Position numbers and translations under genes: made by a program. From the IMG/VR virus record IMGVR_UViG_3300045961_000282, positions 1 to 64,000 of that record: a stretch of 64,000 nucleotides of DNA; one strand, 5' to 3'. This document shows, in pieces, positions 6,620 through 21,725 of this stretch. Each line of letters opens with the position of its first letter. Within the stretch, counting starts at the first letter, position 1. The notes under the pieces are model-generated. The model was given only the letters and a program-made list of their open reading frames with translations. It made no database searches and had not been told where the DNA came from.

Positions 6620-6980
6620 CCTCATCCCCCGAGGCCGAGAGCGGGTAGATCCCCAGCGGAATCCGCTTGCCCTTGTAGCGCTCGTTCGCCTGCGATCTGC
6701 GCTGTATCTGGAAGTCAATCCGCAGGCCCGATGCTCGGACATAGTGATCGGTGATGCTCACCTCGATGAAGTCGGCCAGCGGGTGCCGCGCCCGGCTCGG
6801 GAACAGCCGGTCGTACTCCTCATCGGCGAGCATCACCCGGATGTCCACGTCGCGGAAGTCGGCACGCTCAAGGGCGGACCCCACGAGGTAGGGGGTATCC
6901 AGCGCCTCCCTGACCACGAACGAGGCGAGGTCGATTTTGGCCAGTTCAGGGGCGTCGATGAAGCACCACTTGTCAGCCAT
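6612..6980 (-). CDS. minimal nucleotidyltransferase (Pol beta superfamily)
   Basis: YLVGS...RDVDIR motif plus distal IDFQ. Confidence 0.75.
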   Translation of the reverse strand: MADKWCFIDAPELAKIDLASFVVREALDTPYLVGSALERADFRDVDIRVMLADEEYDRLFPSRARHPLADFIEVSITDHYVRASGLRIDFQIQRRSQANERYKGKRIPLGIYPLSASGDEDG

Positions 6981-7332
6981 CGATGCCCCCGATCCGGCGA
7001 ATCTCGGCCTCGATGTCATTGAGCATGTCGTGCTCACGGGCATCCATGCACCAGTGGGCCACATCGCCGGACCCCGCGGGGTCGTAGATCTTGTGCCAAC
7101 TGGCGACGTATGTCGCGATCTCCTCCGTGAGGGCGCGGCGGATGTCCGGCTCGGTGTCGGCGCAGCAGAACTCCAACGCCCTCGCCTGCTCCTCGGCGCG
7201 GATCACCGGCTCGATGGCATCGATCACCGCCTCGGCGAAATCCCAGTCGCTGTCGGCGTGGCCAACAATCCCCTTGCTCCGGTTGGCGACGATGCCCCGG
7301 ACTGCGATCTCCACCAGTTCCTGCCGGTTCAC
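6973..7332 (-). CDS. modular array protein (B-like and C modules)
   Basis: RQELVEIA ... EPVIRAEEQ. Confidence 0.7.
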   Translation of the reverse strand: MNRQELVEIAVRGIVANRSKGIVGHADSDWDFAEAVIDAIEPVIRAEEQARALEFCCADTEPDIRRALTEEIATYVASWHKIYDPAGSGDVAHWCMDAREHDMLNDIEAEIRRIGGIDG

Positions 7333-7679
7333 TCCACTCCCCCGATCTGTCGCACGTCCCAATCCACCACTCGCAGCGCGGCTGCATAGCCTTCGCGGTA
7401 CCGCTCGTCGGCGCCGAGCCGCGTCGATTCCACGTGCCTCTTCTCGATGGCCTGCACCATCTCCTCGGTCAGGTGCCGACGCTCCCTTGCAATGAACGAC
7501 GGGTCGCGCCACCCCAGTTCGATCATCTGCAACTGCACGGCAGGCTCGACCAGCGCGACGATCCGTTGGGCGATCGCGTCCGACGCGGCCCGGATTCCCT
7601 CCTTGTCGGTGATGTCCGAGAACAGGATCACCGACGCAGCCTCGCGCGACGCAGCCTCGATCAGTTCCTCGCGCGTCAC
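7329..7679 (-). CDS. modular array protein (B-like module)
   Basis: TREELIEAA; GTGA overlap. Confidence 0.7.
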   Translation of the reverse strand: MTREELIEAASREAASVILFSDITDKEGIRAASDAIAQRIVALVEPAVQLQMIELGWRDPSFIARERRHLTEEMVQAIEKRHVESTRLGADERYREGYAAALRVVDWDVRQIGGVE

Positions 7680-8068
7680 GGTGCGCCCCCTGCCCTGTGA
7701 ACGATGTCGGCATAGGTGCTGCACCGACAGGTGTAATCGTAATGCAGCAACTTGAATGGGCACTCGTCAACTACGGCCTTGCCGATTCGCTCTGTGACGG
7801 CGCTGCGCTCCTCGCTCAACAGGGTCGCAGCGATGTCGTTGGGGCTCCACAGGCATGAGCAGAGGTAGTTCAGCCCAGTGTCGTCCATCTCCCCGACGCC
7901 GCACGGCCCGCCGGGATTGGTGCCGTGCGGATCTATCCCATGCGAGCACGAAGGACACGTCACCACCGGCAGCGAGAATGGCTGGGGCGGGGCGGCAGAG
8001 CGCTCCCGTGCGCACCATGAACAGGGGCAGTCGGGATCGTGCGGGCCATCCATCGACGCGCGCCTCAT
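7676..8068 (-). CDS. Cys/His-rich small protein
   Basis: HDPDCPC, CPSCSH, CSC motifs; ATGA overlap. Confidence 0.65.
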   Translation of the reverse strand: MRRASMDGPHDPDCPCSWCARERSAAPPQPFSLPVVTCPSCSHGIDPHGTNPGGPCGVGEMDDTGLNYLCSCLWSPNDIAATLLSEERSAVTERIGKAVVDECPFKLLHYDYTCRCSTYADIVHRAGGAP

Positions 8069-8232
8069 TGCGCCACGCTCTGTCCGCGCTCCCACACCAC
8101 CGGATACTGCTGCCACGGCAGGTCCAGCAGCACCTTGATCACGAAGTCGGCGTCGACCGCGATGGCCGCGGTGAGGTTCGTGTAGATGCCGCACGGCGGC
8201 TCGCGGTCGTAGCAGGCGGCGTACAGGGCCAT
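8065..8232 (-). CDS. hypothetical protein
   Basis: MALYAAC; coupled. Confidence 0.55.
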   Translation of the reverse strand: MALYAACYDREPPCGIYTNLTAAIAVDADFVIKVLLDLPWQQYPVVWERGQSVAQ

Positions 8233-8405
8233 CAGTTCTCCCGTTCGGATGAGTTGGACAGGGCAGCGAAGAACCAGTCGGAATCTGGCGGCGCCGGGCG
8301 CTTGGCGCGCCTGCGGTCGGCGAACGCGAACAATACGCCCGAGACGAAGTCCCACACGATCACCAGCAGCGCCAGCGCCGCGACCAGCATGAGCAACTCG
8401 ATCAC
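8232..8405 (-). CDS. small membrane protein (57 aa, below ORF-track cutoff)
   Basis: MIELLMLVAALALLVIVWDFVSGVLFAF hydrophobic stretch; overlaps neighbours at both ends. Confidence 0.6.
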   Translation of the reverse strand: MIELLMLVAALALLVIVWDFVSGVLFAFADRRRAKRPAPPDSDWFFAALSNSSEREN

Positions 8406-8695
8406 AGCACCACCGCTTCCTCATCGTCATCGGCACTCAGCAGGTCCAGCACCTGACCCCGGACCCAGCGGGCCTCCGGGGTGTCGGCGGTCAGGGAACG
8501 CACCTTCGCGCGCAGCCCGATCAGGTCAGCGGTGAGCCGCCGGTTCGTCTGCTCCCAGAAGGAGATGGCCAGATCGGCCCGGTGCTTCTCGGCCTCGCGG
8601 GCGGCGTCGAGGTAGGAGCAGATGCACAGCACCGCCTCGTCGCCGGTCCCCACCTTGGCCATGTGGTCAAGGCACGCGGATTGATGTTCACTCAT
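8402..8695 (-). CDS. modular array protein (A+D+E)
   Basis: HQSAC..CIC; GLRAKVRSL; VLDLL..DEEA. Confidence 0.75.
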   Translation of the reverse strand: MSEHQSACLDHMAKVGTGDEAVLCICSYLDAAREAEKHRADLAISFWEQTNRRLTADLIGLRAKVRSLTADTPEARWVRGQVLDLLSADDDEEAVVL

Positions 8696-8883
8696 CGCTT
8701 GGGTTCCTCTGTCGTTGGCGGGGCAACCAGTAGGGTCGCGCGGTAGGTCGGTTCCGACGGGCAGCCGTTGGCCGCGCACCACTTGGCCAGCCGTCGCGCG
8801 GCGATGTCCGGCGGGAAACCGCGGCCATCCGGGGCGACCTGCACAACTCGACCACACAGGCGGCATGTCTGCGTGGCCATCAC
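8692..8883 (-). CDS. small Cys-motif protein
   Basis: CRLCG...CAANGC; coupled. Confidence 0.6.
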   Translation of the reverse strand: MMATQTCRLCGRVVQVAPDGRGFPPDIAARRLAKWCAANGCPSEPTYRATLLVAPPTTEEPKR

Positions 8884-9146
8884 AGGGCCTCATCGAACAC
8901 GGCAAGGACGCGCTGGTATCCGATGACTCCCAACCCACGGGGCAACGCCTCCACCTTCGCCCGCAGGTCTGCGCGGGTGGCCTCCACGATCCGCACTCGT
9001 TCCTCCAGCGTGAGCCCCGGCCCCTCGCGGACAGCGCGCCCCCGTTCGTCGGCGCGGATGCGGGCCACCCGTTCGCAGTCGCAGAACCGCGTCAGGTCGT
9101 CGGGCAGGAACTCCTGCGAGATGCACATCAGGTCGTGGTCACTCAT
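8880..9146 (-). CDS. modular array protein (A+C+D+E)
   Basis: HDLMC..CDC; IRADER; DLRAKVEAL; VLAVFDEA. Confidence 0.85.
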   Translation of the reverse strand: MSDHDLMCISQEFLPDDLTRFCDCERVARIRADERGRAVREGPGLTLEERVRIVEATRADLRAKVEALPRGLGVIGYQRVLAVFDEAL

Positions 9147-9472
9147 CGCCCTGATCTCCTCAGTTCATCCAGCACGGAATCGTGCGCCGACTTCCACACG
9201 TCCCGGATCAGCGCGTCGGCGGGCCGGGCGCGGTCGTCCGGGTCCGGCCCCTCGTGCATCCATGCGAGCAGGTGGAACGAGTCCATCCCGAGGAACGGCG
9301 GCGTGAGGTCTCGGGCGGCTGCCGCAGCGTCCTCCGCCCGTTGCCGCTCGCGCTCCACCACGCGAGCGATCAGGGCGCAGACGCATCCGAACTCGTGTGC
9401 ATAGCACAGCGGGTCATGGGCGAGTGTCTGCGACAGGTACTCGTCCCGCACCCACTTCTTGTCGGCGCTCAC
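9143..9472 (-). CDS. modular array protein (A)
   Basis: HDPLC..CVCALIARVVERER. Confidence 0.8.
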   Translation of the reverse strand: MSADKKWVRDEYLSQTLAHDPLCYAHEFGCVCALIARVVERERQRAEDAAAAARDLTPPFLGMDSFHLLAWMHEGPDPDDRARPADALIRDVWKSAHDSVLDELRRSGR

Positions 9473-9792
9473 GGCTGGGCCTCCTCATCGAGCAGGGCGA
9501 GAACGGCATCAACACGCACCGTATCGATCACCTTGCCTGACGGCACCCACCCGGTGCCGTTCAGCCACTCGTACTCCATGCGCACCGCGTGGGCGGGCAG
9601 CATCACCACCTTTGCCCGCAGGTCGGCGAGGCGTTCTCGTGCAGCATCTAACTCTGAGTTGAGGCGGTGAACTTCACGCGAGCAGTGCTCGCGCTGCTCC
9701 CGCTCGCGCTCCACCACGCGGGCGATCAGGGCGCAGGTGCACTGCAAGGTCAGCGCGGACGCAGCCGGACACGGGGCGTCATGTGCGTTCAC
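9469..9792 (-). CDS. modular array protein (A+D+E)
   Basis: HDAPC..CTCALIARVVERER; DLRAKV; VLALLDEEA. Confidence 0.85.
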   Translation of the reverse strand: MNAHDAPCPAASALTLQCTCALIARVVEREREQREHCSREVHRLNSELDAARERLADLRAKVVMLPAHAVRMEYEWLNGTGWVPSGKVIDTVRVDAVLALLDEEAQP

Positions 9793-10037
9793 TGGGCACC
9801 ACCCATGAACGAACGAGCGATCTGCTCAGCGACATCCAGCCCGTCGAGGTACCACTGGTCAGCCGTTGTCGGGCGCTCGCCGAACTCGGCCTTGTCGGAC
9901 TGGTACCGGGCGTCGATGGCCGCCGCGATCTCCTCGGCGACAGCGGCGCGGATAGCAGCGACGCGCTCGCAGTCGCAGAACGCCGGGTTGGTCCACGACG
10001 GGTCAGCGCAGCGGCACATGGGGTCGTGGTCACTCAC
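9789..10037 (-). CDS. modular array protein (A)
   Basis: MSDHDPMC..FCDCERVA. Confidence 0.8.
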   Translation of the reverse strand: MSDHDPMCRCADPSWTNPAFCDCERVAAIRAAVAEEIAAAIDARYQSDKAEFGERPTTADQWYLDGLDVAEQIARSFMGGAQ

Positions 10038-10234
10038 CGCTGGGCCTCATCGAGCAGGGCGAGGACGTCGGAGCGGAGCAGCAACTCGCTCCCGAGAACC
10101 TCCCACGACGGCAGTGCCTCCACCTTCGCCCGCAGGTCGGCGTAAACGCGGGCGATCAGGGCGCACTGGCAGTCGGGGTCGAAGGGATGGTCACGATTGG
10201 GCTTCCACGGACACAACGGATGGTGGGTGGTCAC
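10034..10234 (-). CDS. modular array protein (A+D+E)
   Basis: HHPLC..CQCALIARV; DLRAKVEAL; VLALLDEA. Confidence 0.85.
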   Translation of the reverse strand: MTTHHPLCPWKPNRDHPFDPDCQCALIARVYADLRAKVEALPSWEVLGSELLLRSDVLALLDEAQR

Positions 10235-10707
10235 GGCCGGGCCTCCTCGTCGCGTGGCGCGATGGCGGAGCATGCGTACCCGTTCCCGGCGAGGCTGTGA
10301 TCGATCGTGTGATCCGACCACCAGTGGCCGTACTCCTCGTCGTCGTGCGGGTCCAGCCGTTCACACTGGTACCCCCCGGACTCCCGGTACTCACAGACGA
10401 ACCGGACGGACCGGTCGGCCACCGGGCACCGGTACGGGCGCTCTCCAGCCTCCTCATCGAACAAGGCGAGGACCCATCTCAGTGCTGCGTTGGAGTGCTC
10501 GTGGGTCGTCGGCAGCAGTGCCTCCACCTTCGCCCGCAGGTCGAGCAGGATCTCCTCCCGAAGGCACGCGCGGGTCACCTCGACCATCTCGCCTTGGATG
10601 ATCGGCTGGACGGTGTCGTAGACGGCAGCGATGATCTCCCGATCCGGGTGGTCGAATTTCCCCACGGCCTGCATCGCGGCGTCGATAGCACGCTCGCGGG
10701 CCGTCAT
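10231..10707 (-). CDS. modular array protein (B+D+internal E, fused Cys/His tail)
   Basis: ARERAIDA; DLRAKVEAL; internal VLALFDEEA; second DEEA at end. Confidence 0.85.
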   Translation of the reverse strand: MTARERAIDAAMQAVGKFDHPDREIIAAVYDTVQPIIQGEMVEVTRACLREEILLDLRAKVEALLPTTHEHSNAALRWVLALFDEEAGERPYRCPVADRSVRFVCEYRESGGYQCERLDPHDDEEYGHWWSDHTIDHSLAGNGYACSAIAPRDEEARP

Positions 10708-11150
10708 GGCTTGGCCTCCTCATCGAACAGGGCGAAGACCTCATTGCGTTCGATCAGGGCGAATGTCGTCAACTCTCCGTCGATCATGCGCGCTCCAGTG
10801 CCGCGCGTCCGCAGCCCCTCCACCTTCGCCCGCAGGTCGGAGAGGCGGTCCTCCGCTCTGGCCGCGTCTGCCTGAGCAAGCCCCAGCGCCTCTACCGCTT
10901 CATCGCCGCGCCGCTGTTCGTCGGCGCGGATGATCGGCTCGGTTGCCGCGAGGACAGCCGCCGCGCGGCCCCGCGCCCAGTGGACCGCTGAGCACTCCCT
11001 CTCGGATTGATTGGCGAACGGCGCCCACTCGTCAACGAACAGGGTCGATTTGTGCGCCACGCAGACGTCTCCGAACCGCTTGCACGGGTTGTCGGTTCCT
11101 AGCAGGGCGTTCGCTCCAGCCTCAATGGCCCGCTCTCGGGCGCCGCTCAT
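10704..11150 (-). CDS. modular array protein (B+C+D+E)
   Basis: ARERAIEAG; EPIIRADEQ; DLRAKVEGL; VFALFDEEA. Confidence 0.85.
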   Translation of the reverse strand: MSGARERAIEAGANALLGTDNPCKRFGDVCVAHKSTLFVDEWAPFANQSERECSAVHWARGRAAAVLAATEPIIRADEQRRGDEAVEALGLAQADAARAEDRLSDLRAKVEGLRTRGTGARMIDGELTTFALIERNEVFALFDEEAKP

Positions 11151-11686
11151 CGTCCAACCTCGCAGTCGTACCGTTCCTCGTCCTTGATCCACACGCAGTT
11201 CTCATGCGTGTGCACGTAGTCCGGATTGTCGGCCTTCCCATCCAGCAGGGCGTCGATGGCCTCTGCCTCACGGCTGTCCCGCGGGTAGTCGCCAGCCTCC
11301 CCGCCCAACTCATCGAGCAGTTCAAGGGCCTTGGACTTCCAGCAGTCGCACGCTCGGCGCCGCCGACGGAGATCGCGCGGGCTGGCCCACGAGGCACACT
11401 CGTCCTCGCACAGTTCGCTCTGGATCTTCGTCCGCAGGTCGGTGAGGAATCCCTCGATCACCCGCGAGCACATGTGCGTCGCATCCGCCCTCCCCCGTTC
11501 ATCGGCTCGGATGATCGGCTCAGCGCCATCGAGAACCATACGCGCGATGCAGTCCGGGCAGTCCGCGACGCTTTGCGGATCCCATGTTCCCGCGCCGTGC
11601 TCGGGGATCATGCACTTCTCCCTGCGCCATCGCGCGGCGAGGTTGCTCGCCCCGGCCTCGACGGCGCAAACGCGGGCGTCGCTCAT
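11147..11686 (-). CDS. modular array protein (B+C+D+E)
   Basis: DARVCAVEAG; EPIIRADER; DLRTKIQ; ALELLDE. Confidence 0.85.
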   Translation of the reverse strand: MSDARVCAVEAGASNLAARWRREKCMIPEHGAGTWDPQSVADCPDCIARMVLDGAEPIIRADERGRADATHMCSRVIEGFLTDLRTKIQSELCEDECASWASPRDLRRRRRACDCWKSKALELLDELGGEAGDYPRDSREAEAIDALLDGKADNPDYVHTHENCVWIKDEERYDCEVGR

Positions 11687-11770: not shown

Positions 11771-12250
11771 TCATGTCGCGTCATCGATGGCTCCGTCATC
11801 AAGCAGGGAAAGGAGGTCATCGACAGCCGCGCGATAACCGACATTCCAAGGGCCAATCCCCTCTGACGCGGTCACCTTCGGCAGCGCCTCCACCTTTGCC
11901 CGCAGATCGGCAACGACGGTGCGACGGACTCCGACTTGGTAGTCGGCGTACACCTGTTCATCGACTGCGCGCCAAGCGCGAAATGCATCGTCAAGGATGA
12001 TCCGCTCGACCGCGTCAAGGACGGTGACGGCGATGGCCCGACGATCCCAGCCACCCTTGAACGTCGCCATCGCCTCCGACCCGGCCTCGATGGCCCGCTC
12101 GCGTGCATCGCCCATCGTCGATCTCTCCGCTCGACCGTCCTGCTCAGGCACGGGCCCCGGCCACGGCACCTCACCGAGCACCGGGCACCGGCCATCGCCG
12201 ACCAGACAGCCGTCCGGCATGCAGTCCATGTGGAGCCGAAGGTCACTCAT
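11771..12250 (-). CDS. modular array protein (Cys N-extension + B+D+E)
   Basis: Internal MGDARERAIEAG at 12115; DLRAKVEAL; LLSLLDD. Confidence 0.8.
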   Translation of the reverse strand: MSDLRLHMDCMPDGCLVGDGRCPVLGEVPWPGPVPEQDGRAERSTMGDARERAIEAGSEAMATFKGGWDRRAIAVTVLDAVERIILDDAFRAWRAVDEQVYADYQVGVRRTVVADLRAKVEALPKVTASEGIGPWNVGYRAAVDDLLSLLDDGAIDDAT

Positions 12251-12599
12251 CGCCAGTCTCCTTGTCCAGCAGGGCGAGGACTTCGCGCAGGGCCACAGCC
12301 GCACCCACGTCGAACGTGTCGTGCGACACCACATACTCGGCGTCGCGTTCTTCAAGCAGTGCCTGCACCTTCGTCCGCAGGTCGGCGTAGATGTGGGCCC
12401 GAGATTCGATCTCGATCGTGGCTGCCAACTCCTCTGCCCACATGCTGCGGCGCTGACGGGAGAGCACGGCCTCCCGCTCGTCGGCGCGGATCACCGGCTC
12501 GGCGGCTTCGACGGCGGCTTCGACTCCGCCACGGATGTCGCTTGCCTTCAACCACGCTTGCCATCCAGCCTCGATGGCGTCGTCGCGGGCGTCGCTCAT
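12243..12599 (-). CDS. modular array protein (B+C+D+E)
   Basis: DARDDAIEAG; EPVIRADER; DLRTKVQAL; VLALLDKE. Confidence 0.85.
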   Translation of the reverse strand: MSDARDDAIEAGWQAWLKASDIRGGVEAAVEAAEPVIRADEREAVLSRQRRSMWAEELAATIEIESRAHIYADLRTKVQALLEERDAEYVVSHDTFDVGAAVALREVLALLDKETGDE

Positions 12600-12811
12600 G
12601 TCAGGGCATCCTCTCGGGCACGACGGTTCTGCACGACGGTGAGCCGGAATGCCACGTTCAGTGGCAGGTCGGACGTGAACTGGCCCAGTGAGATGACCCC
12701 CACCAGACCGGAGAAAATCTCCGCCGATCCGACCAGTACGCCCCACTGGGCGCGACGCAGGAACGGCCTGCTGTGTGCGTGCCGCCACGTGGGCGTGAGC
12801 AGGCCCTTCAC
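12596..12811 (-). CDS. small putative membrane protein
   Basis: Coupled at both ends; hydrophobic core. Confidence 0.6.
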   Translation of the reverse strand: MKGLLTPTWRHAHSRPFLRRAQWGVLVGSAEIFSGLVGVISLGQFTSDLPLNVAFRLTVVQNRRAREDALT

Positions 12812-13203
12812 GACTCCTCGCCCTTTTCCGGTACCACGCCAGACCCCTCATCGAGCATCGCGAGGACGCTGGCTAGGGAGCAGCAGCACGACAGCGCATA
12901 CGGCGCGTACGACAGGTAGCACGCCTCCGGGTGCTCTAGCCCGTCCACCTTCGCCCGTAGGTCGGCGAGGAGGGTCTCGCGGGCCTCGCGCTCCAGTTCG
13001 GGGAGCGAGCGCCGCCAGACCTCGCCGTCGATCTTGACCTGCGCGATCTGCTCGTCGGCGCGGATGATCGGCTCGACGGCGGCGAGAATCGTCTCCGCTG
13101 TCTCATACGCCTCCGCGATCGTCTGGCTGACGTAGTTGTCGCGGCGTCCGGAAAGCCACGCCCTCGCTCCGGCCTCGATGGCCTGCTCGCGTGCGTCACT
13201 CAT
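12808..13203 (-). CDS. modular array protein (B+C+D+A-like+E)
   Basis: DAREQAIEAG; EPIIRADEQ; DLRAKVDGL; HPEAC..CCC; VLAMLDE. Confidence 0.85.
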   Translation of the reverse strand: MSDAREQAIEAGARAWLSGRRDNYVSQTIAEAYETAETILAAVEPIIRADEQIAQVKIDGEVWRRSLPELEREARETLLADLRAKVDGLEHPEACYLSYAPYALSCCCSLASVLAMLDEGSGVVPEKGEES

Positions 13204-13507
13204 GATCGACCACCTCCCACTCTCCAACCAACCGTCGCTCGATGCGCAGGTTTGGTTTGCCCCCGGAGTGCCGAGCACCCATGCGAACGATCTTCAGTCC
13301 GCGCAGGGCCTCCTCGAATGTCCTGAGCCTGCCTGCCACTCGACGCTCGTGGCCACCGTCCATCTTTGGGTCGCCGTCATAGACGATCTCGTACTCCCAC
13401 GCCTGCGTGGCGTCGGCCTTGGCCCGCTCGTCGTCGAGAGCGATTGGGGCGCACTCGCACCACTGCTCTGGTACATGACACTGGCACATCGGGTCGGGAT
13501 CACTCAT
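13196..13507 (-). CDS. modular array protein (A + DGDP-MDG/LRIERR module)
   Basis: MSDPDPMCQC..CEC; C-terminal module shared with 15576-16172. Confidence 0.8.
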   Translation of the reverse strand: MSDPDPMCQCHVPEQWCECAPIALDDERAKADATQAWEYEIVYDGDPKMDGGHERRVAGRLRTFEEALRGLKIVRMGARHSGGKPNLRIERRLVGEWEVVDHE

Positions 13508-14999: not shown

Positions 15000-15166
15000 G
15001 CCTGTCCCCCTCTGGTGCGATAACGCAAACGGTTCATGTGGGCACGTTGCACGGCGCGGCGCCTGACGGTCCAGACCCAGAACACCGTCTTGGGCCGGGC
15101 ATCGTCCGGCTCGCGCCACGGAATGACGATCGCGACGCTGCCCCGTCGCTGGTAACGGAAGGTCAC
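14996..15166 (-). CDS. small basic protein (56 aa, below cutoff)
   Basis: GTGA/ATGA overlaps at both ends fill the gap exactly. Confidence 0.55.
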   Translation of the reverse strand: MTFRYQRRGSVAIVIPWREPDDARPKTVFWVWTVRRRAVQRAHMNRLRYRTRGGQA

Positions 15167-15579
15167 GGCTGGGCCTCCCCGAGCATGTCGCTGACCATTT
15201 CGAGCGCGGCCACGTAGCCCGCCGCGAACTGCGCCGCGGGCTCGGGGGCGTCGCCGTGCGAATGTGGGCGCAGCGCCTCCACCTTCGCCAACAGGTCGCC
15301 AATGAGTTCGCGGCGGACGTGTGTGGGCAGGTGGTCGATGTGGTTCTCAAGTTCCTCGATGGTCCCTCGGGCACGCGCCCGCTCCTCGTCGCGAGCAATC
15401 GCCCAGACGGCATCGACGACGGCACCCGCCAACGCATCGCGCGCGATGGGGAGCAGGGACAGGGCGCCCAACACCCCACCCGCAGCCTCGATGGCGCGCT
15501 CACGGGCCGGGGCCGCGATGGGTTGTGGGGTGCAGTCGCTGCACGGGCAGTAGGTGCCATGGCCGACGCTGTACGTCAC
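15163..15579 (-). CDS. modular array protein (Cys motif + B+C-like+D)
   Basis: HGTYCPC; ARERAIEAAG; IARDEER; DLLAKVEAL. Confidence 0.8.
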   Translation of the reverse strand: MTYSVGHGTYCPCSDCTPQPIAAPARERAIEAAGGVLGALSLLPIARDALAGAVVDAVWAIARDEERARARGTIEELENHIDHLPTHVRRELIGDLLAKVEALRPHSHGDAPEPAAQFAAGYVAALEMVSDMLGEAQP

Positions 15580-16172
15580 GACTGCACCTCCCACGGCCCG
15601 ACGACGCGGCGCTCGATGCGCAGGTTGACCTTGGGGTCGTGCGTGCTGCGCAGAACCACGCTGTCATACGCGGCGCGCGCATTCGACAGTGTGGTGAACG
15701 GACCGCCGATCTGGCGGCGGGCGTAACTGCCGTCCATCCGTGGGTCGCCGTCGCAGACGATGACCCACTCCTGCTGCACGGTGGCCGAAGGGCTGGCCGC
15801 ATCGAGGGGGCCGAACAGGACTTCGGCGATGCCGACGACGTAGCCCGCGGCGTGCATCCGCTGGCCGTAACCATACGGATCCTCGCGCATGTCCTCGACC
15901 GGCTTCAGTGCGTCCCGCTTGCCCTTGGCCTCGGTCAGCATCTCGTCGACCTTCCCCTGAAGGTTGGCCAGCAGGGTGGTCTGAATGGCCGAGCGCATCC
16001 GCGGCCACGTCGACTCGGCGGCGCGCCGCCCCTCTTCGTAGAAGGTCGGCTCCACGATGTCGATCACCGCGTCGGCCATGTCGCCAAAGGTCGCCGCATC
16101 CCCCTTCGCGTCGATCACGCGCATCAGCGCCTTGATGCTGCGGGCGCGCGCGTTTCTGCGGGCGGTGCTCAT
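15576..16172 (-). CDS. modular array protein (divergent B/C/D + DGDP-MDG/LRIERR module)
   Basis: ARARSIKA; NLQGKVDEM; C-terminus similar to 13196-13507. Confidence 0.75.
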   Translation of the reverse strand: MSTARRNARARSIKALMRVIDAKGDAATFGDMADAVIDIVEPTFYEEGRRAAESTWPRMRSAIQTTLLANLQGKVDEMLTEAKGKRDALKPVEDMREDPYGYGQRMHAAGYVVGIAEVLFGPLDAASPSATVQQEWVIVCDGDPRMDGSYARRQIGGPFTTLSNARAAYDSVVLRSTHDPKVNLRIERRVVGPWEVQS

Positions 16173-16901: not shown

Positions 16902-16902
16902 G

Positions 16903-17157: not shown

Positions 17158-17341
17158 CCTCGACCAGCCGCCGGATCGCCACCAGCACGTCACCTAAGGC
17201 GTCGACTGCACCGTTGCAATACTCCGCTGGCTGACGGTCGTTGAGGCGCCGGTTGCGCCACACATCGCGCAGCAACTCGACCTGCACCTGTACCTCGGTG
17301 AACGCGTCGTCGCGGGCGACGATTGCCTTGTCAATCTCCAC
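17150..17341 (-). CDS. hypothetical protein
   Basis: Coupled ORF. Confidence 0.6.
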   Translation of the reverse strand: MEIDKAIVARDDAFTEVQVQVELLRDVWRNRRLNDRQPAEYCNGAVDALGDVLVAIRRLVEDA

Positions 17342-17780
17342 TAGTGCTCAACCTCTCTCGCATCTGGTCCCACAACCGAACGTCGCCGAACTCATGGGTC
17401 ATCACCTCGCGCCCCAGCAGCGCCTCCGCGCGACGATGGAACTCCTCGGTCGGCAGCGCAAGCGAACCCGTCAGCACCGAGGCGCGGAACGCATCGGCCA
17501 GCGCCTTCTCGGCCTCGGCGCGAACCATAGGCATCACGGCATCGATGACGGTGCTCGCCACGAGGAACCAGTCCGGCCGCCCGTTGCGCAGCGTCGGCGG
17601 CCCGTCGAACATCCGCTCACGCAACTGCGCGACGGCAGCGGTGATCTCCGGGGTCCACTCATCAAGGGACACGTCGCAGGAGATGCACACCTGATGCGCG
17701 CCGCCGATGGTGCAGTGGAAGTTGCCGCACTCGATCCGCTCGGTGGGGCCGTTGCAGCCGGGGCACTCAGGCATCGTCAT
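17331..17780 (-). CDS. zinc-ribbon + C-like module protein
   Basis: CPGC..C..HC..CISC; VIDAVMPMVRAEAE. Confidence 0.7.
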   Translation of the reverse strand: MTMPECPGCNGPTERIECGNFHCTIGGAHQVCISCDVSLDEWTPEITAAVAQLRERMFDGPPTLRNGRPDWFLVASTVIDAVMPMVRAEAEKALADAFRASVLTGSLALPTEEFHRRAEALLGREVMTHEFGDVRLWDQMRERLSTSGD

Positions 17781-18090
17781 CCCATCGGTGACCCTCGGGC
17801 AGGGGGCCGGTGTAGTCGTCGCGCAGCATGCACCGCACGTGTGGCTGCACATGGCTCTTGCACGCGGGACAACAGGTCCGGACGTAGCCGCCTTGGACCT
17901 CCATCTTGTGGTGCGCCATGCGCTCGCGCACCTTGGCGACCGCCACCATCGCCTCGTTCTGCTCGGGGGCAACCCAGCCGTCGGCGACCAGTCGCTTGCG
18001 CTCCCGCTCGGCGACCATGAGGATGAAGTCGCACCGGCAGGGCTCGTAGACCCCAGTGGTGACGCACGGGCAGAACTCATCATGCGACAA
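17767..18090 (-). CDS. modular array protein (A)
   Basis: TTG start after AAGGAG; HDEFCPC..CRCDFI..ERER. Confidence 0.7.
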   Translation of the reverse strand: MSHDEFCPCVTTGVYEPCRCDFILMVAERERKRLVADGWVAPEQNEAMVAVAKVRERMAHHKMEVQGGYVRTCCPACKSHVQPHVRCMLRDDYTGPLPEGHRWDDDA

Positions 18091-18289
18091 GGTGGTGCTC
18101 CTTCTCGTCGATGATGATGAACCGCAGCGGCAGGTAGATGCGGCTCTCGTAGAACCGTACCGCGCCCTTGGCGCTCCGCCGCAGGTAGAACCGCTGGGGA
18201 TCCTCGTTGAAGGTGTCAGCGAGGCGCTGGTTGAACTCCCAGTTCTCCCCCTGCAGCGGCACGGCATGCAGCCGCCAGCGCTTCGTCAC
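18080..18289 (-). CDS. hypothetical protein
   Basis: Coupled ORF. Confidence 0.6.
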   Translation of the reverse strand: MTKRWRLHAVPLQGENWEFNQRLADTFNEDPQRFYLRRSAKGAVRFYESRIYLPLRFIIIDEKEHHLVA

Positions 18290-18516
18290 GGCTGCTCGAT
18301 CCGCGCCGCCGCCCAGCGCAGCGCCGCTGCGTGGGTCTCGATCTGCACCTTGGGGTGGCGCCCGCGCACGGCGAAGTTAGCCACCACGGCCTGCTCCCGC
18401 AGGTCGGTGGCGATCTGTCGGCGCAGGTGCGCCTCGGCATCCCGCAGCAGGTCGCACTGGCAATCGTCGTGCCCGCTGTGGGGCTCCTGCGGGCACATCG
18501 GGTGGTGATCAAACAT
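18286..18516 (-). CDS. modular array protein (A + D-like)
   Basis: HHPMC..DCQCDLL; DLREQ. Confidence 0.75.
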   Translation of the reverse strand: MFDHHPMCPQEPHSGHDDCQCDLLRDAEAHLRRQIATDLREQAVVANFAVRGRHPKVQIETHAAALRWAAARIEQP

Positions 18517-18772
18517 CGTCGGTCTCGGTCATCCTGAGGAACTCGGTCAGCGAATCGCGGATCTCGCGGGCCTGCTCCCGGGTCAGGTGGGCAACGGCGC
18601 GGGTCCGATCGCTGTCGATGACCCTCAACCATACGAAGGGGCCCTCGATGATCTCGCGGGGCCCGACGACCGCGACCGCGCTCGATTCCTGCACCTCGAT
18701 GGTCTCGCCGCCGGTTCCGCGCACGCGAGCGAACCCGACCAGCCCGCGGGGTCCGGTGAACGTGTCAGACAT
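18509..18772 (-). CDS. hypothetical phage protein
   Basis: VQESSA..VWL..AHLTREQA motif. Confidence 0.7.
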   Translation of the reverse strand: MSDTFTGPRGLVGFARVRGTGGETIEVQESSAVAVVGPREIIEGPFVWLRVIDSDRTRAVAHLTREQAREIRDSLTEFLRMTETDDV

Positions 18773-18962
18773 CGCTGCTCCTCGTGCGCCCCAGATGCAG
18801 GTAGGCCATGACCTCGTCGCGACGGAAGCGCCGATGCCCACCGGGCGTGACGATCACCGACAGCCTGCCGGTGTTCGCCCAGCGGGTCACCGTCTTGGGG
18901 TCGACTCCGAACATCCGAGCGACCTCGACGGGCCGCAGCAGTTCACGATCCTTGGGAATCAT
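18765..18962 (-). CDS. BldC-like MerR/Xis-type winged-HTH DNA-binding protein
   Basis: LLRPVEVARMFGVDPKTVTRWA..G.L....TPGGHRRF closely matches the actinobacterial BldC signature. Confidence 0.85.
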   Translation of the reverse strand: MIPKDRELLRPVEVARMFGVDPKTVTRWANTGRLSVIVTPGGHRRFRRDEVMAYLHLGRTRSSDV

Positions 18963-19177
18963 TTCCGGTCCTTCCGTTCAGCCTGAGCGGCTTCGAGCAG
19001 AACGCCTGCGGCAGCGTACAAGCGGTTCGCAGCCCCGGGGTGCAGGGAGCCGACGGAGTCCGCCAGCGCCTCGGCCTGCTCGGCGTAGGTGCCCAACAGC
19101 GACGCCCGCAGGCCCACATGGGCAGCGCACCAGCGCTTGTGGGCCCCCTCGCCGCGACAGCCGCCGCAGTCGCTCAC
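18959..19177 (-). CDS. hypothetical protein
   Basis: CGGC..HKRWC; coupled. Confidence 0.6.
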   Translation of the reverse strand: MSDCGGCRGEGAHKRWCAAHVGLRASLLGTYAEQAEALADSVGSLHPGAANRLYAAAGVLLEAAQAERKDRK

Positions 19178-19515
19178 AGCCACACCTCCATGCGGTTCGG
19201 CCCTCCACCGATGGGCGGGTTGAGCAGTTCCAGTACGTCCTTGATCGGGCACTCGCAGTGCCCGTAATCGCTGAGCGCCGCCGGGCAGCAGTCGGCGTGG
19301 GGCAGGTCCTCAACCTTGGCGCGCAGTTGGTCCAGCCACGCCTGCTCGGCGGACGTGGCCCGCTTCTCGGTCGGGGTCACCGCCTCCTCCTTTCCTGTCG
19401 GACTGCTCAGGGCGAAGATGCCCAGCGCGCCGATTGCCACGATGGAGCCGAATGCCACGAAGAACAGCATCGTCGCCGAGATCAGTGCGGCAATCGCCAC
19501 CGCGACCTCAGCCAC
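19174..19515 (-). CDS. TM helix fused to modular array segment (D + A-like + E-like)
   Basis: N-terminal hydrophobic helix; QLRAKVEDL; HADCC..CEC; DVLELL. Confidence 0.7.
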   Translation of the reverse strand: MAEVAVAIAALISATMLFFVAFGSIVAIGALGIFALSSPTGKEEAVTPTEKRATSAEQAWLDQLRAKVEDLPHADCCPAALSDYGHCECPIKDVLELLNPPIGGGPNRMEVWL

Positions 19516-19969: not shown

Positions 19970-20123
19970 AGCCCGCCTCCGTGAAGATCTTCCACTCGCC
20001 CGCCGCGTAGCCGAGGATCGCGACCCCGCCCTTGATGAACAGCAGCGCCCCGTCGACGATGGCTGCCGAGTCGGCGCCGACATCCTCCATCTCGCCGTTG
20101 GCAACCGTGACGATCCACCTCAC
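19962..20123 (-). CDS. small beta-rich hypothetical protein
   Basis: GTGA overlap; YAAGEW motif. Confidence 0.6.
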   Translation of the reverse strand: MRWIVTVANGEMEDVGADSAAIVDGALLFIKGGVAILGYAAGEWKIFTEAGYE

Positions 20124-20350
20124 AGATCCTCCAGCAGTTCGAGCACGTCGGACTTCCACACCAGCGGCGACGGGTCATGGTCGGTCAGCGCGAAGGCGGC
20201 GGCGGGCAGCCCCGCGACCTGCTCGCGCAGGCGCGCCGCGAACCGACGGGTCAGTTCCTTGTCGATGCTGCGGATCGTGGTGCACTCGCACCACGAATCC
20301 CCGAGCCGATGGCTGGCCACTGGGCACAGGGGATGGTGCCCCTCAGCCAT
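20120..20350 (-). CDS. modular array protein (A+D-like+E-like)
   Basis: HHPLC..WCEC; RLREQVAGL; SDVLELLE. Confidence 0.75.
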   Translation of the reverse strand: MAEGHHPLCPVASHRLGDSWCECTTIRSIDKELTRRFAARLREQVAGLPAAAFALTDHDPSPLVWKSDVLELLEDL

Positions 20351-20702
20351 CAGTGCCCCCCATCAGTGCCGCAGCCGCCTCCACATGCCTGCCGACGCGG
20401 GCGCTCAGCACCTCGGTCAGTAGCGCCGCCGCATCGGCCCGCGCCAGCCGGGCGATCAGGATGTCGCGGTTGGTCAGCGACGCCGCGGCAAGGGCCACGT
20501 TCTGTGAACCATACGTCTGCCCGAGCATCTGCAGCGCCGACAGCAACTCCGGTTCCGCGGCTCTGGTTCCGGTGTCCAGCGGCTCCAGTGTCGTCAACAG
20601 GGCGGCGGCAAGGTGCCGGGCGACCGAGCGCGATTCCGACGGCAGCACCATCGGCCATGCGTCGGATTCGATGCGCTCCAGTTCTGCGCGGATGTCGGTC
20701 AT
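20343..20702 (-). CDS. hypothetical protein
   Basis: ALQMLGQTYG..NVALAAA.LT resembles ALERLGDEYG..GVAIVAATLT in 19508-19969. Confidence 0.65.
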   Translation of the reverse strand: MTDIRAELERIESDAWPMVLPSESRSVARHLAAALLTTLEPLDTGTRAAEPELLSALQMLGQTYGSQNVALAAASLTNRDILIARLARADAAALLTEVLSARVGRHVEAAAALMGGTDG

Positions 20703-21001
20703 CTCGGCTGCACCTCACTGATCCGTACACATACGGTCGTCCCACCACCGATGCTGGTCCATGAACCACCCGCAGCAAGACAGGCCATCTCCTGTTCGTG
20801 GTCGCGGACCATGGAGCGCTCGACGACGAACGTGATCGACCCAAGAGCGATGGCCACGATAAAGCAGACCACCACTCCGATCGTGATGTTCCTGACGCGC
20901 TCGGTGATCTGCTCGCGACGGGCCTGCTCCTCGGCGTTCTTCTCGCGCATCAAGCGAAACTCATGGTCCCGCTCGGCGGAGATCCAGTCGCTGTCATTCA
21001 C
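20699..21001 (-). CDS. single-pass membrane protein
   Basis: TM helix; CLAAGGSW..C motif. Confidence 0.7.
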   Translation of the reverse strand: MNDSDWISAERDHEFRLMREKNAEEQARREQITERVRNITIGVVVCFIVAIALGSITFVVERSMVRDHEQEMACLAAGGSWTSIGGGTTVCVRISEVQPR

Positions 21002-21411
21002 AGTCGGAATCCTCCGTTGGCGGGGACGCCGAACACGGCCGACATCAGCGTGGTCAGGCTGCCGGTCCAGCGCAGCATCACGTCGGTGTACTTCCCGCAC
21101 GCGCACGACGCAGGGTAGACGTTCAGGCCGACCTCATCCTCGTTGCCCGTGAAGGTGTCAGCGAACTGCGAGTAGGTGACTTCGTGAACCTCGGCGCCGG
21201 GCGCGATGATCCAGCGGCACGGCTCGACATCCTTGTCGTAGGGGCGCATGTGCTCCGATGCGTCCCAGTCCTGCCACCCGTAGACGGACACCGCCGCCCA
21301 GCGCCACGGCTCACCGTCGACCCATCCGGTGACCTTGACCTTCTTGGCCGACCGGGCAAGGAACTCCCGAATCCGGATCGCCTGATCCTCGGGCAACGTC
21401 AACTCACTCAT
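20998..21411 (-). CDS. hypothetical protein
   Basis: Coupled ORF; SCACG. Confidence 0.7.
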   Translation of the reverse strand: MSELTLPEDQAIRIREFLARSAKKVKVTGWVDGEPWRWAAVSVYGWQDWDASEHMRPYDKDVEPCRWIIAPGAEVHEVTYSQFADTFTGNEDEVGLNVYPASCACGKYTDVMLRWTGSLTTLMSAVFGVPANGGFRL

Positions 21412-21725
21412 GATCCATCTCCGATGACGTCGAGCACTTCCTTCATCCCCTGTGCACGAATGTGCCCGATGGTCCGCATCACGTACTGGCCCTCGCGGCC
21501 CTCGCGATCGGCCTCGGCGCTGGTGGTGTCCATCAACGCCGTGACCCGCCTCCGCAGGGCCTCGCGCTCACCCGAGACCGCGCGGTCGATCAGGGCGCAC
21601 TGGCACTTGACCCCGCAGCGGCAGTCCCCGGCCTTGCCGCGGTCGTGCCACTTGCTCGTGCCGCCCACGGTGATGCACTTCTCGTCGGCCATGACGGGGC
21701 ACAGCGCGCGGTGCTTGTCAGCCAT
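21408..21725 (-). CDS. modular array protein (A+D-like+E-like)
   Basis: HRALC..CQCALIDR..ERE; ALRRRVTAL; EVLDVI. Confidence 0.75.
   Translation of the reverse strand: MADKHRALCPVMADEKCITVGGTSKWHDRGKAGDCRCGVKCQCALIDRAVSGEREALRRRVTALMDTTSAEADREGREGQYVMRTIGHIRAQGMKEVLDVIGDGS

What the first reader, a model, noticed from the sequence alone, without database searches (positions are those of the whole stretch)
6973..21725. ~15 kb array of about 30 small genes assembled from five recurring modules with hypervariable inserts
Seen: consecutive, overlapping minus-strand genes reuse the same ordered peptide blocks. A = H-x(2-4)-C...C-x-C-x-(L/I); B = (D)ARERAIEAG; C = EPIIRADER; D = DLRAKVEAL (about 15 clear copies); E = VLALLDEEA. 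The segments between blocks are unrelated from gene to gene, and the combinations differ (A+C+D+E at 8880, A+D+E at 9469 and 10034, B+C+D+E at 10704, 12243, 12808 and 13500, C+D+E at 14099). Inference: a constant amphipathic helical scaffold displays variable payloads and is diversified by recombination at the conserved blocks, i.e. a combinatorial library of small early proteins. Anti-defence or host-takeover roles are plausible but unproven. It is loosely comparable to repeat-bounded cassette loci in T-even phages, but here the repeats are coding and lie inside the proteins.
Basis: partly seen in the sequence, partly recalled or inferred. Interest (0 to 1): 0.88.

Follow-up and report, generated by a model that had tools for sequence, protein, structure and literature searches.

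The report
Phage array of one small helical family
A 206-kb uncultivated phage of high-GC bacteria carries about 23 tandem copies of one previously undescribed ~100-residue helical protein domain, built with interchangeable front ends, which shows how phages can expand and reshuffle a small-protein family whose function is still unknown.

Summary
Window 6973-21725 holds about 45 tiled minus-strand genes. At least 23 carry the recurring blocks: 11 copies of the D-block 21-mer and 7 of the C-block 24-mer, against 0 in 100 shuffles. The blocks are not five free modules. B, C, D and E are the four helices of one ~100-aa domain (AF2 pLDDT 89.7). That domain has 299 representative clusters in metagenomes, no Pfam, PHROG, PDB or cultured-phage relative, and almost no presence in bacterial genomes. 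Block A is an H-x3-C...C-x(1-2)-C cap, probably metal-binding. It replaces helix 1 (pLDDT 81.2, same three-helix body) or sits in loops. The 'variable inserts' are loops that are conserved in orthologues from other phages, so they are not hypervariable. Exchange at the blocks is supported over evolutionary time: N- and C-halves have different nearest relatives, and all four combinations of two head types and two tail types exist. Ongoing shuffling is unproven. Tandem arrays of 2-8 mixed-head members occur in other contigs; this is the largest seen. Function is unknown. Most likely these are non-enzymatic binders with a common scaffold and paralogue-specific loops. Interpretation partly supported; new variant of a known kind.

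The parts
13500..13871 (-). g13500, reference member of the core family (B-C-D-E, 123 aa)
   Evidence: Full-length match to the family profile. AF2 pLDDT 89.7 with helices 3-16, 24-47, 51-90, 100-121. N-half closest to P0005, C-half closest to A-headed P0002/P0003.
12808..13203 (-). g12808, core B-C-D-E with Cys-rich H3-H4 loop
   Evidence: Its first 15 codons plus the upstream junction are 97.7% identical over 44 nt to those of g13500.
12243..12599 (-). g12243, core B-C-D-E
   Evidence: N-half closest to P0037, C-half closest to P0082.
11771..12250 (-). g11771, core B-C-D-E with a 45-aa Cys-containing N-terminal extension
11147..11686 (-). g11147, core B-C-D-E with Cys/His insert in the H1-H2 loop, a Cys motif in the H3-H4 loop and a C-terminal extension
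   Evidence: The H1-H2 insert is conserved in P0024 (52% over 61 aa).
10704..11150 (-). g10704, core B-C-D-E with a 45-aa H1-H2 insert; clean mosaic
   Evidence: The N-part through the D block matches P0097 (46% over 116 aa). The D-loop-E half matches A-headed L026:2284-2562 (66% over 44 aa).
10231..10707 (-). g10231, core B-C-D-E plus a 70-aa Cys/His-rich C-terminal extension
14099..14401 (-). g14099, core with degenerate helix 1 (C-D-E clear)
15163..15579 (-). g15163, core B-C-D-E with a short Cys-containing N-terminal extension
15576..16172 (-). g15576, divergent core domain fused to a C-terminal domain 'd4'
   Evidence: Core profile hit and d4 HMM hit. The C-terminus is 44.6% identical to g13196 residues 27-99. 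A d4 gene also lies next to family genes in L001.
13196..13507 (-). g13196, A cap + d4 domain
10034..10234 (-). g10034, A cap + D + E (66 aa)
9469..9792 (-). g9469, A cap + C-like helix + D + E
   Evidence: Its C-half is 49% identical to B-headed P0005.
8880..9146 (-). g8880, A cap + C + D + E; target of the second structure model
   Evidence: AF2 pLDDT 81.2 with helices 24-40, 47-67, 75-87 behind a His/Cys cap.
8402..8695 (-). g8402, A cap + weaker D and E
   Evidence: A HMM hit; LRAKV motif; alignment.
20120..20350 (-). g20120, A cap + divergent D + E
21408..21725 (-). g21408, extended A cap + C-like, D-like and E-like helices (weak)
   Evidence: A HMM hit and alignment. hhalign against the B-head profile is not significant.
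19174..19515 (-). g19174, N-terminal hydrophobic (membrane-like) segment + D + A-type motif in the loop + E
9143..9472 (-). g9143, A cap + C-like helix + unrelated C-terminal part
   Evidence: A 37-nt tract is 97% identical to g9469.
9789..10037 (-). g9789, A cap + unrelated C-terminal part
18286..18516 (-). g18286, A cap + other
17767..18090 (-). g17767, A cap + Cys-rich tail
6973..7332 (-). g6973, helices 1-2 (B+C) of the domain joined to a different C-terminal half
   Evidence: hhalign probability 97%, covering B+C only.
7329..7679 (-). g7329, helices 1-2 (B+C) joined to a different C-terminal half (weaker)
   Evidence: hhalign probability 87%.
10699..10744 (-). Example of the gene-junction cassette: E-helix tail codons (…FDEEAKP-stop) contain the GGAGG Shine-Dalgarno sequence of the next gene and overlap its ATG by 4 nt
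   Evidence: (repeat families D4, D9, D16). Analogous cassettes (L-I-D-G-G-S-D-E-stop overlapping M-S-D) occur in L004, L006, L014, L017, L021 and L026.
18765..18962 (-). Non-family gene inside the array: HTH_17/MerR-type DNA-binding protein (65 aa)
   Evidence: One member of the region hits Pfam HTH_17 (2.9e-12) and PHROG 66 (excisionase/transcriptional regulator). The assignment to this gene is by its sequence.

Best explanation
The region is a tandem multigene family. One previously undescribed small helical domain is present in about 23 of about 45 translationally coupled genes of a single long minus-strand operon, in a 206-kb uncultivated actinobacteriophage-like genome. The domain has helix 2 with EPxIRADER, a long helix 3 with DLRAKVEAL and helix 4 with VLALLD. 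The three-helix body carries one of two alternative front ends. One is a helical head (helix 1, ARExAIEAG). The other is a His/Cys3 cap (H-x3-C...C-x(1-2)-C) that probably binds a metal ion. Specificity-carrying variation sits in the loops, often as further Cys/His mini-motifs, and in C-terminal extensions. The paralogues are old, individually conserved lineages, not a recent burst. New combinations arose by recombination whose breakpoints fall in or next to the conserved helices. Whole-gene gain and loss is probably helped by a conserved junction cassette: E-helix tail, Shine-Dalgarno sequence, 4/8-nt stop/start overlap, then M-S-D. Shown here: anatomy, fold, family breadth, mosaic relationships. 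Inferred: the proteins are non-enzymatic binders that share a scaffold, and perhaps an oligomerisation or docking surface formed by the conserved helices, and each paralogue recognises a different partner through its head and loops, most plausibly host or phage proteins during takeover or counter-defence.
For: Coding status and tiling. One domain: nine genes align end to end at 30-42% identity. The profile finds 299 representative clusters (69 at E<=1e-10), mostly 95-130 aa and matched over almost the whole profile. In an 89-sequence alignment, E36, P37, I39, R40, A41, E43, L71, R72, V75, V112, L113 and L115 are more than 90% invariant, with variable-length loops between them. Fold: AF2 pLDDT 89.7 with four helices coinciding with B, C, D, E. 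The A-head model has pLDDT 81.2 and the same C-D-E helices. A cap: H4, C8 and C24 are invariant in 24 sequences from 12 contigs, with the fourth ligand 1-2 residues before C24. The same motif occurs inside the H3-H4 loop in at least 8 outside members and 3 window genes. Old paralogues and conserved inserts: nearest relatives of most halves are in other genomes. Mosaicism: g13500 vs P0005 is 35/57 identical in the N-part and 7/36 in the C-part. P0005 vs g9469 is 5/34 and 19/39. P0002 vs P0003 is 9/32 and 35/41. g10704 combines a P0097-like N-part with an L026-like C-part. Substrate for recombination: tracts of 22-44 nt at 90-100% identity lie on the blocks. Codon identity at identical residues is 0.68 in block columns (0.51 expected) and 0.47 elsewhere (0.46 expected). 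The window copies share CGG-GCG in the D block where other genomes use CGC-GCC. Arrays with mixed heads elsewhere: L004, L006, L014, L017, L020, L021, L022, L026. Single operon: no promoter or terminator excess. Junction cassette. Phage context.
Against: There is no functional evidence of any kind. No Pfam, PHROG, PADLOC, PDB-sequence or Foldseek relative exists. Metal binding is inferred from the ligand pattern only, because model coordinates could not be inspected. pTM is only 0.51-0.56, so the packing of the helices is uncertain and oligomerisation is a guess. The excess synonymous identity in the blocks could reflect stronger codon preference at conserved sites. Non-block identical residues may be chance alignments. 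D-block synonymous similarity does not decay significantly with distance (rho 0.16, Mantel p 0.15). The low N-half/C-half correlation (r = 0.12) is inflated by the 50%-identity clustering of the library. Acidic pI is shared with non-family neighbours, so it is not informative.
Confidence: 0.6

Rival explanations
1. One reading: an actively shuffling combinatorial library. Recombination at the blocks continually generates new payload combinations within phage populations, so the array is a diversity generator.
For: Near-identical 22-44-nt tracts lie on the blocks. Blocks show excess synonymous identity and window-specific codons. Mosaic relationships exist between genomes. An endonuclease VII and a RecB/Cas4-like exonuclease are encoded nearby.
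Against: The paralogues are only 30-42% identical to each other. Each has closer relatives in other genomes, with its inserts conserved there. That indicates long-lived, fixed combinations. No recent chimeras are seen inside the array. D-block similarity does not depend on distance. No sister genome is available.
Confidence: 0.12
2. The paralogues are subunits of one hetero-oligomeric helical assembly. The conserved helices C, D and E zip together, and translational coupling provides the stoichiometry. The array would then encode one machine or scaffold rather than many independent binders.
For: The long amphipathic helix 3 has an L-x2-L-x3-V-x2-L heptad-like pattern. pTM is low despite high pLDDT. 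Coupling by 4/8-nt overlaps is nearly universal. Several members always occur together in other phages.
Against: Copy number varies from 2 to about 23 between phages, which is unlike a fixed complex. No multimer prediction could be run. Translational coupling is general in this operon, including the unrelated genes.
Confidence: 0.15
3. Metal- or redox-dependent transcription modulators. The H-x3-C...C-x(1-2)-C cap would work like the zinc site of ZAS anti-sigma factors or the Fe-S site of WhiB-like proteins, with each paralogue targeting a different host sigma factor or regulator.
For: The His/Cys3 ligand set is invariant. The body is a small helical bundle. Actinobacterial hosts, inferred, have many sigma factors (established knowledge). 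A lone HTH gene lies inside the array.
Against: There is no Pfam hit to zf-HC2, RsrA-like or Whib models for any window protein. There is no PDB sequence or fold match. The ligand order and spacing differ from ZAS (H-x3-C-x2-C with an upstream Cys) and from Wbl (four Cys). Most family members (B heads) have no such motif.
Confidence: 0.1
4. The selected feature is the DNA or RNA repeat itself, for example regulator-binding sites or RNA elements spread through the operon like stoperators, and the shared peptides are a by-product.
For: There are 11 same-strand copies of a 21-mer and 7 of a 24-mer. Synonymous identity in the blocks is elevated. The E-tail codons double as Shine-Dalgarno sequences.
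Against: The blocks are always in the same reading frame and at the same place in a folded domain. They are conserved as peptides in other genomes that use different synonymous codons, and in a 48%-GC phage (L001). Only the E-tail/SD overlap shows a plausible dual constraint.
Confidence: 0.03

Closest known systems
Hyperplastic regions of T4-type phages with PeSL cassettes (Arbiol et al. 2010, PMC2839356; Comeau et al. 2014, PMC4122927)
   Same: Clusters of small, mostly unknown, non-core genes. Short repeated sequences at gene boundaries serve as recombination points for modular shuffling, gain and loss of genes.
   Different: PeSLs are intergenic promoter plus stem-loop terminator units bounding unrelated ORFans. 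Here no promoter or terminator signals occur, and the genes overlap by 4/8 nt. The repeats are coding (helices of one protein family, plus a coding junction with the SD), and the genes are paralogues.
gp38 adhesin of T2/T6-type phages: conserved glycine-rich motifs separating hypervariable segments (Trojet et al. 2011, PMC3157838)
   Same: Conserved structural-core motifs inside the protein alternate with variable, specificity-determining segments that can be exchanged. This is the best conceptual match to 'repeats that are coding and lie inside the proteins'.
   Different: gp38 is a single virion gene in the tail-fibre locus with Gly-rich motifs and a beta-rich fold. Here there are 23 helical cytoplasmic-type paralogues in one operon. 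The variable segments are not hypervariable between orthologues.
Terminal multigene families of large DNA viruses (poxvirus ankyrin/PRANC and BTB-kelch genes; African swine fever virus MGF families); own knowledge, not checked here
   Same: Tandem arrays of diverged paralogues sharing a scaffold or docking part, with variable target-binding parts. They lie near a genome (here: contig) end, and copy number differs between relatives.
   Different: Different hosts, folds and sizes. A role in host range or immune evasion is established there and entirely untested here. The physical genome end is unknown for this contig.
Host-takeover or early small-gene modules of large virulent phages (e.g. SPO1 terminal-redundancy module, T5 pre-early genes); own knowledge
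   Same: Long runs of small, tightly packed genes of unknown or host-directed function, adjacent to DNA-metabolism genes.
   Different: Those modules consist of unrelated genes under strong early promoters. Here half of the genes belong to one family, and expression timing is unknown.

Membership tests
The B-C-D-E helical domain family defined here (no public name) | Full-length match to the family profile with the EPxIRAxE, LRxxV and VLxL motifs | tested here: met
   Sixteen window ORFs hit the profile. 299 outside clusters match. The invariant columns are listed.
The B-C-D-E helical domain family defined here (no public name) | All-helical fold with the blocks as helices 1-4 (or cap plus helices 2-4) | tested here: met
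   AF2 models with pLDDT 89.7 and 81.2. The tertiary packing is less certain (pTM 0.51-0.56).
The B-C-D-E helical domain family defined here (no public name) | Occurs as tandem sets with mixed head types in phage contigs | tested here: met
   L001, L004, L006, L012-L014, L017, L020-L022 and L026. Absent from 30 control loci.
PeSL-type mobile regulatory cassettes (T4-type HPRs) | Intergenic sigma-70-like promoter plus stem-loop terminator flanking the shuffled genes | tested here: not met
   0 promoter-like sites and 5 terminator-like sites (5.9 expected) in 5.5-25 kb. The genes overlap and leave no intergenic space.
gp38-type GRM/HVS adhesins | Glycine-rich conserved motifs separating hypervariable segments in a tail-fibre adhesin | tested here: not met
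   The conserved motifs are charged or hydrophobic helices, not Gly-rich. The genes are not in a tail locus. The inserts are conserved in orthologues.
ZAS anti-sigma factors (zf-HC2 / RsrA-like) | H-x3-C-x2-C zinc motif within an anti-sigma domain; Pfam zf-HC2 match | tested here: not met
   No such Pfam hit among the 49 region proteins. No PDB profile or Foldseek match for the A-head model. The motif here is H-x3-C...C-x(1-2)-C.
WhiB-like (Wbl) Fe-S proteins | Four conserved Cys (C-Xn-C-X2-C-X5-C) and a Pfam Whib match | tested here: not met
   No Whib hit. Only three Cys plus one His are conserved.
Metal-binding knuckle (generic) | Four ligands converging on one site and bound metal | not testable with these tools
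Diversity-generating retroelement targets | Template/variable repeat pair of about 100 nt or more with adenine-specific differences | tested here: not met
   The longest intra-region repeats are 22-57 nt and coincide with the conserved blocks, not with the variable parts.
Diversity-generating retroelement targets | A nearby reverse transcriptase | not tested
   No systematic search for a reverse transcriptase was made in the window, and the remaining 142 kb of the contig were not examined.
Known anti-phage-defence or anti-defence proteins | Match to a PADLOC model or to a named PHROG | tested here: not met
   No family member matches. A library of anti-defence proteins was not available.

The most novel reading that the evidence does not exclude
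The family is a phage adaptor system. The invariant surface of helices 2-4 (EPxIRADER / DLRAKVEAL / VLALLD) docks all paralogues onto one common hub, either a host machine such as RNA polymerase or a protease, or each other as hetero-oligomers. The interchangeable heads and Cys/His-bearing loops each capture a different host target. The array would then work like the multigene host-range families of large eukaryotic DNA viruses. It would be kept evolvable by in-frame recombination joints inside the helices and by a conserved gene-junction cassette.
Probability: 0.2. Interest if true: 0.8.

Novelty: new variant of a known kind. Interest (0 to 1): 0.55.

Why it matters
Most genes of large phages are small ORFs of unknown function, and very few families among them have been defined. 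This work defines a widespread but entirely unannotated domain: 299 clusters, none named, none in cultured phages. It comes with a confident fold, clear invariant residues and two alternative front ends. One genome holds about 23 diverged copies, which is a natural panel for specificity studies. The array also gives a concrete, testable case of how phage small-protein families evolve. The recombination joints lie inside conserved helices, and a coding junction couples translation while supplying homology for unequal crossing-over. If the paralogues bind different host proteins, the array would be a ready-made toolkit for probing actinobacterial physiology. If they bind one another, it would be an unusual modular assembly.

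Tried and rejected
(1) Close relatives: megablast of the array and of 20 kb elsewhere against 50,697 phage records found nothing. tblastn of three family members against the same records found nothing meaningful.

(2) Annotation libraries: Pfam, PHROGs and PADLOC on all 49 region proteins, Pfam on 89 family members and PHROGs on 10 further outside members gave no family-level hit.

(3) PDB by sequence profile and by fold: nothing below E = 0.1. The anti-sigma (ZAS) and WhiB ideas prompted by the H-x3-C signature were therefore dropped as membership claims.

(4) Bacterial genomes: one 2-kb MAG fragment only, so a prophage or host origin was rejected.

(5) Syntenic sister genomes sought through two non-family array genes: only distant partial hits. 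These loci served as a negative control.

(6) Gene conversion by proximity: D-block synonymous differences against distance were not significant.

(7) The N-half/C-half identity correlation was judged biased by the 50% clustering of the library and is used only qualitatively.

(8) DGR-type hypermutation was rejected because the repeats coincide with the conserved parts, not the variable parts.

(9) Assembly artefact was rejected. The paralogues are only 30-42% identical, the shared tracts are at most 57 nt, and GC3 supports coding throughout.

(10) The first alignment (A3) was too diverse for the locus finder. A back-translated D-block pattern and a deeper alignment were used instead.

Full report
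**Source and context.** The window is the first 64 kb of IMGVR_UViG_3300045961_000282, a 206,257-bp uncultivated viral contig. It has 62-69% GC and no tRNA genes. It has no nucleotide-level relative among 50,697 deposited phage genomes.

The neighbouring genes are phage-like:
- a DNA methyltransferase, a primase/helicase, a RecB/Cas4-like exonuclease and a tail-fibre-like protein;
- an endonuclease VII, an M23 peptidase with a peptidoglycan-binding domain, a polysaccharide deacetylase and a beta-helix protein.

The closest cultured relatives of the primase/helicase are Arthrobacter, Gordonia and Streptomyces phages at about 40% identity. The genome is therefore most likely a large actinobacteriophage.

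- Third-position GC and frame analysis, with start codons chosen by tiling, give about 45 minus-strand genes between 6973 and 21725.
- About 40 of 48 junctions in 5.8-22 kb overlap by 4 or 8 nt.
- Promoter-like and terminator-like sites are not enriched (0 and 5 found; 1.4 and 5.9 expected). The region therefore reads as one translationally coupled operon.
- The D-block 21-mer (up to 3 mismatches) occurs 11 times, 4 of them exact. The C-block 24-mer occurs 7 times. Both gave 0 in 100 shuffles.
- Repeat finding shows the same families of 20-57-nt coding repeats.
- Module HMMs hit only within 7.1-21.7 kb of the 64-kb six-frame translation, and nowhere in 30 unrelated phage loci.

Two corrections apply. 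There are about 45 genes rather than 30. Of these, 23-24 carry at least one block, and the rest are unrelated small genes: an HTH_17/MerR-type protein, membrane-like peptides and several Cys-rich proteins.

**What the blocks are.**
- All-against-all BLASTP joins 21 genes into one network.
- Nine of them (g10231, g10704, g11147, g11771, g12243, g12808, g13500, g14099, g15163) align from end to end at 30-42% identity.
- A profile of these plus five metagenome relatives finds 299 representative clusters at E<=1e-3 (69 at E<=1e-10) among 1.84 billion representatives. Most are 95-130 aa and match nearly the whole profile.
- An 89-sequence alignment has the consensus MxxRDELIEAG...DAVEPxIRADER...LADLRAKVEAL...VLALLDG. 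E36, P37, I39, R40, A41, E43, L71, R72, V75, V112, L113 and L115 (g13500 numbering) are more than 90% invariant, with variable-length loops between them.
- AlphaFold2 on this alignment gives mean pLDDT 89.7 (pTM 0.56) and four helices at 3-16, 24-47, 51-90 and 100-121. These coincide with blocks B, C, D and E.

So B-C-D-E is one small helical domain, not four modules.

The domain has no public annotation or solved relative:
- no Pfam, PHROG or PADLOC model;
- no PDB relative by sequence or fold;
- no member in cultured phages;
- one 2-kb MAG fragment among 185,579 species genomes.

All members checked are unnamed metagenome proteins.

**Block A.**
- Twenty-four A-type proteins from 12 contigs share M-x-D-H-D-P-L-C...C-x(1-2)-C-x-L-I-A-K-V-R-A-D-E-R, followed by the D and E helices. 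H4, C8 and C24 are invariant.
- The AF2 model of g8880 (pLDDT 81.2) keeps the C, D and E helices (24-40, 47-67, 75-87). A short His/Cys cap takes the place of helix 1.
- The same H...C...C-x-C motif also occurs as an insert in the loop between helices 3 and 4. It is seen there in at least eight outside members and in g19174, g11147 and g12808.
- Other loop inserts carry their own conserved Cys/His sets.

One His plus three Cys is a typical tetrahedral metal site. This is inferred from the pattern and was not tested. The A-head model has no PDB neighbour, and no window protein matches zinc anti-sigma or WhiB models.

**Other combinations in the array.**
- The A cap is also joined to unrelated C-terminal parts (g9143, g9789, g18286, g17767).
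- In g13196 it is joined to a second small domain, 'd4'. That domain recurs at the C-terminus of g15576 (44.6% identity) and next to family genes in L001.
- Helices 1-2 are joined to different C-terminal halves in g6973 and g7329 (hhalign probabilities 97% and 87%).

**Are the inserts hypervariable?** No. For most window members, the nearest relative of each half is a protein from another genome, not a neighbouring paralogue.
- g10704 and P0097 are 46% identical over 116 aa, including the 45-aa helix 1-2 insert and its Cys/His positions.
- g11147 and P0024 are 52% identical over 61 aa, including the insert.
- The helix 3-4 loop of g13500 is conserved in P0002 and P0003.

The paralogues are therefore old, individually maintained lineages with lineage-specific loops.

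**Is there exchange at the blocks?** Over evolutionary time, yes.

| Pair | N-part identity | C-part identity |
|---|---|---|
| g13500 vs P0005 | 35/57 | 7/36 |
| P0005 (B head) vs g9469 (A head) | 5/34 | 19/39 |
| g13500 (B head) vs P0002 (A-type N-terminus) | not used | 16/40 |
| P0002 vs P0003 | 9/32 | 35/41 |

All four combinations of two front types and two tail types therefore exist, with the switch around the D block. In addition, g10704 follows P0097 up to the D block. It then follows A-headed L026:2284-2562 (66% over 44 aa).

Across 3,916 pairs of B-head members, N-half and C-half identities are almost uncorrelated (r = 0.12). The 50% clustering of the library biases this figure, so I use it only qualitatively.

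**DNA-level evidence inside the array.**
- Tracts of 22-44 nt at 90-100% identity lie on the blocks. The best are 13160-13203 vs 13828-13871 (44 nt, 97.7%) and 9344-9380 vs 9700-9736 (37 nt, 97.3%).
- Identical residues use the same codon 68% of the time in block columns (51% expected) and 47% elsewhere (46% expected).
- The window's D blocks mostly use CGG-GCG, where other genomes use CGC-GCC.

This fits some homogenisation or shared recent origin of block DNA, but it is not conclusive. D-block synonymous similarity does not fall significantly with distance (Mantel p = 0.15). Whole-protein similarity does fall with distance (rho = -0.38), as expected for tandem duplication. No sister genome is available to test for recent shuffling.

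- In the window, the E-helix tail codons (...L/F-D-E-E-A-x-P-stop, or ...G-D/N-E-stop) contain the GGAGG Shine-Dalgarno sequence of the next gene, 6-7 nt before its start. They overlap that start by 4 or 8 nt, and the next gene often begins M-S-D.
- In L004, L006, L014, L017, L021 and L026 the equivalent cassette encodes L-I-D-G-G-S-D-E-stop, a G-rich SD and M-S-D in overlap.

This explains part of the nucleotide conservation of block E. It also supplies in-register homology for unequal crossing-over that would add or remove whole genes. That last step is inference.

**Generality.** Tandem sets with mixed A and B heads occur in other viral and metagenome contigs:
- 2-4 members in L001, L004, L006, L012, L013 and L014;
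- 4-8 members in L017, L020, L021, L022 and L026.

One of these contigs (L001) has only 48% GC. With 16 profile hits and 23-24 block-bearing genes, the array in this window is the largest seen here.

**How it most likely works.**

Shown: one operon of translationally coupled genes. About half encode a common three- or four-helix body with alternative heads, lineage-specific loops and extensions. Evolution was by duplication and by exchange near the conserved helices.

Inferred: the proteins are small non-enzymatic binders. The invariant helices provide the fold, and perhaps a shared oligomerisation or docking surface. Helix 3 has a heptad-like L-x2-L-x3-V-x2-L stripe, and pTM is low despite high pLDDT. 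The heads and loops give each paralogue its own partner. The long-term retention of many distinct paralogue lineages across phages argues for non-redundant specificities. A host-directed role (takeover or counter-defence) is plausible from the genomic setting. It has no direct support.

**Comparison with known systems.**
- The array works somewhat like the hyperplastic regions of T4-type phages, where PeSL repeats mediate modular shuffling (PMC2839356, PMC4122927). It fails their defining features, which are intergenic promoter-terminator cassettes.
- It resembles the gp38 adhesin design of conserved core motifs alternating with exchangeable specificity segments (PMC3157838). It differs in fold, locus, copy number and degree of variability.
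- The terminal multigene families of large eukaryotic DNA viruses are a further functional analogy. This rests on my own knowledge and was not checked here.

I rate it a new variant of a known kind, built on a previously undescribed protein domain.

Noticed in passing
window 16471-16884 (-): This 137-aa acidic protein inside the array belongs to a widespread phage family. It has partial relatives in 24 other IMG/VR contigs of very different GC content (29-65%) and matches phrog_28969 (unknown function). It is unrelated to the helical family.
   Followed up: partly
window 19508-19969 (-) and 20343-20702 (-): Two non-family genes in the array share a 45-residue segment (42% identity). The first matches phrog_13737 and has partial relatives in six other viral contigs, including contigs of 162 kb and 82 kb.
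   Followed up: partly
window 7676-8068, 8692-8883, 13864-14106, 16169-16474, 16903-17157, 17331-17774 (all -): Several other small proteins in the operon are rich in Cys/His (up to 11 Cys in 130 aa), with CxxC-type pairs suggesting zinc ribbons. They are not family members, except for a weak C-block-like stretch in g17331 (hhalign probability 45%).
   Followed up: partly
window 12596-12811 (-) and 14996-15166 (-): Two further short ORFs (71 and 56 aa) would fill the gaps left after start-codon correction, and they keep the 4-nt overlap tiling. Coding support is weak for the first and absent for the second.
   Followed up: no
window 43353-45608 (+): The 751-aa RecB/Cas4-like exonuclease has a sub-threshold Pfam match to an intein splicing domain across residues 221-531 (E = 1.8e-5, below the curated cut-off). 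It may be an intein-interrupted nuclease.
   Followed up: no
window 1841-4225 (-) and 433-1872 (-): At the downstream end of the same strand lie a 794-aa protein with only a weak HATPase_c_3 match and no PHROG, followed by a DNA methyltransferase (phrog_67, E = 1.3e-79).
   Followed up: no
window 5799-22000, one of the 49 proteins (not identified which): One region protein matches the PADLOC model mad1 (E = 2.7e-9) and one matches Pfam DUF7736 (E = 1.7e-8). The summary output did not say which genes these are.
   Followed up: no
L001 9742-11192: A 48%-GC, 100-kb phage contig carries two adjacent family members and a separate gene for the 'd4' domain just downstream of ThyX. The family therefore crosses a large GC range, and d4 is associated with it in more than one genome.
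   Followed up: partly
window 35650-37210: An endonuclease VII gene (+) and an M23 peptidase with a peptidoglycan-binding domain (-) lie tail to tail and overlap by a few bases. A beta-helix protein (37211-38707) lies next to them.
   Followed up: no
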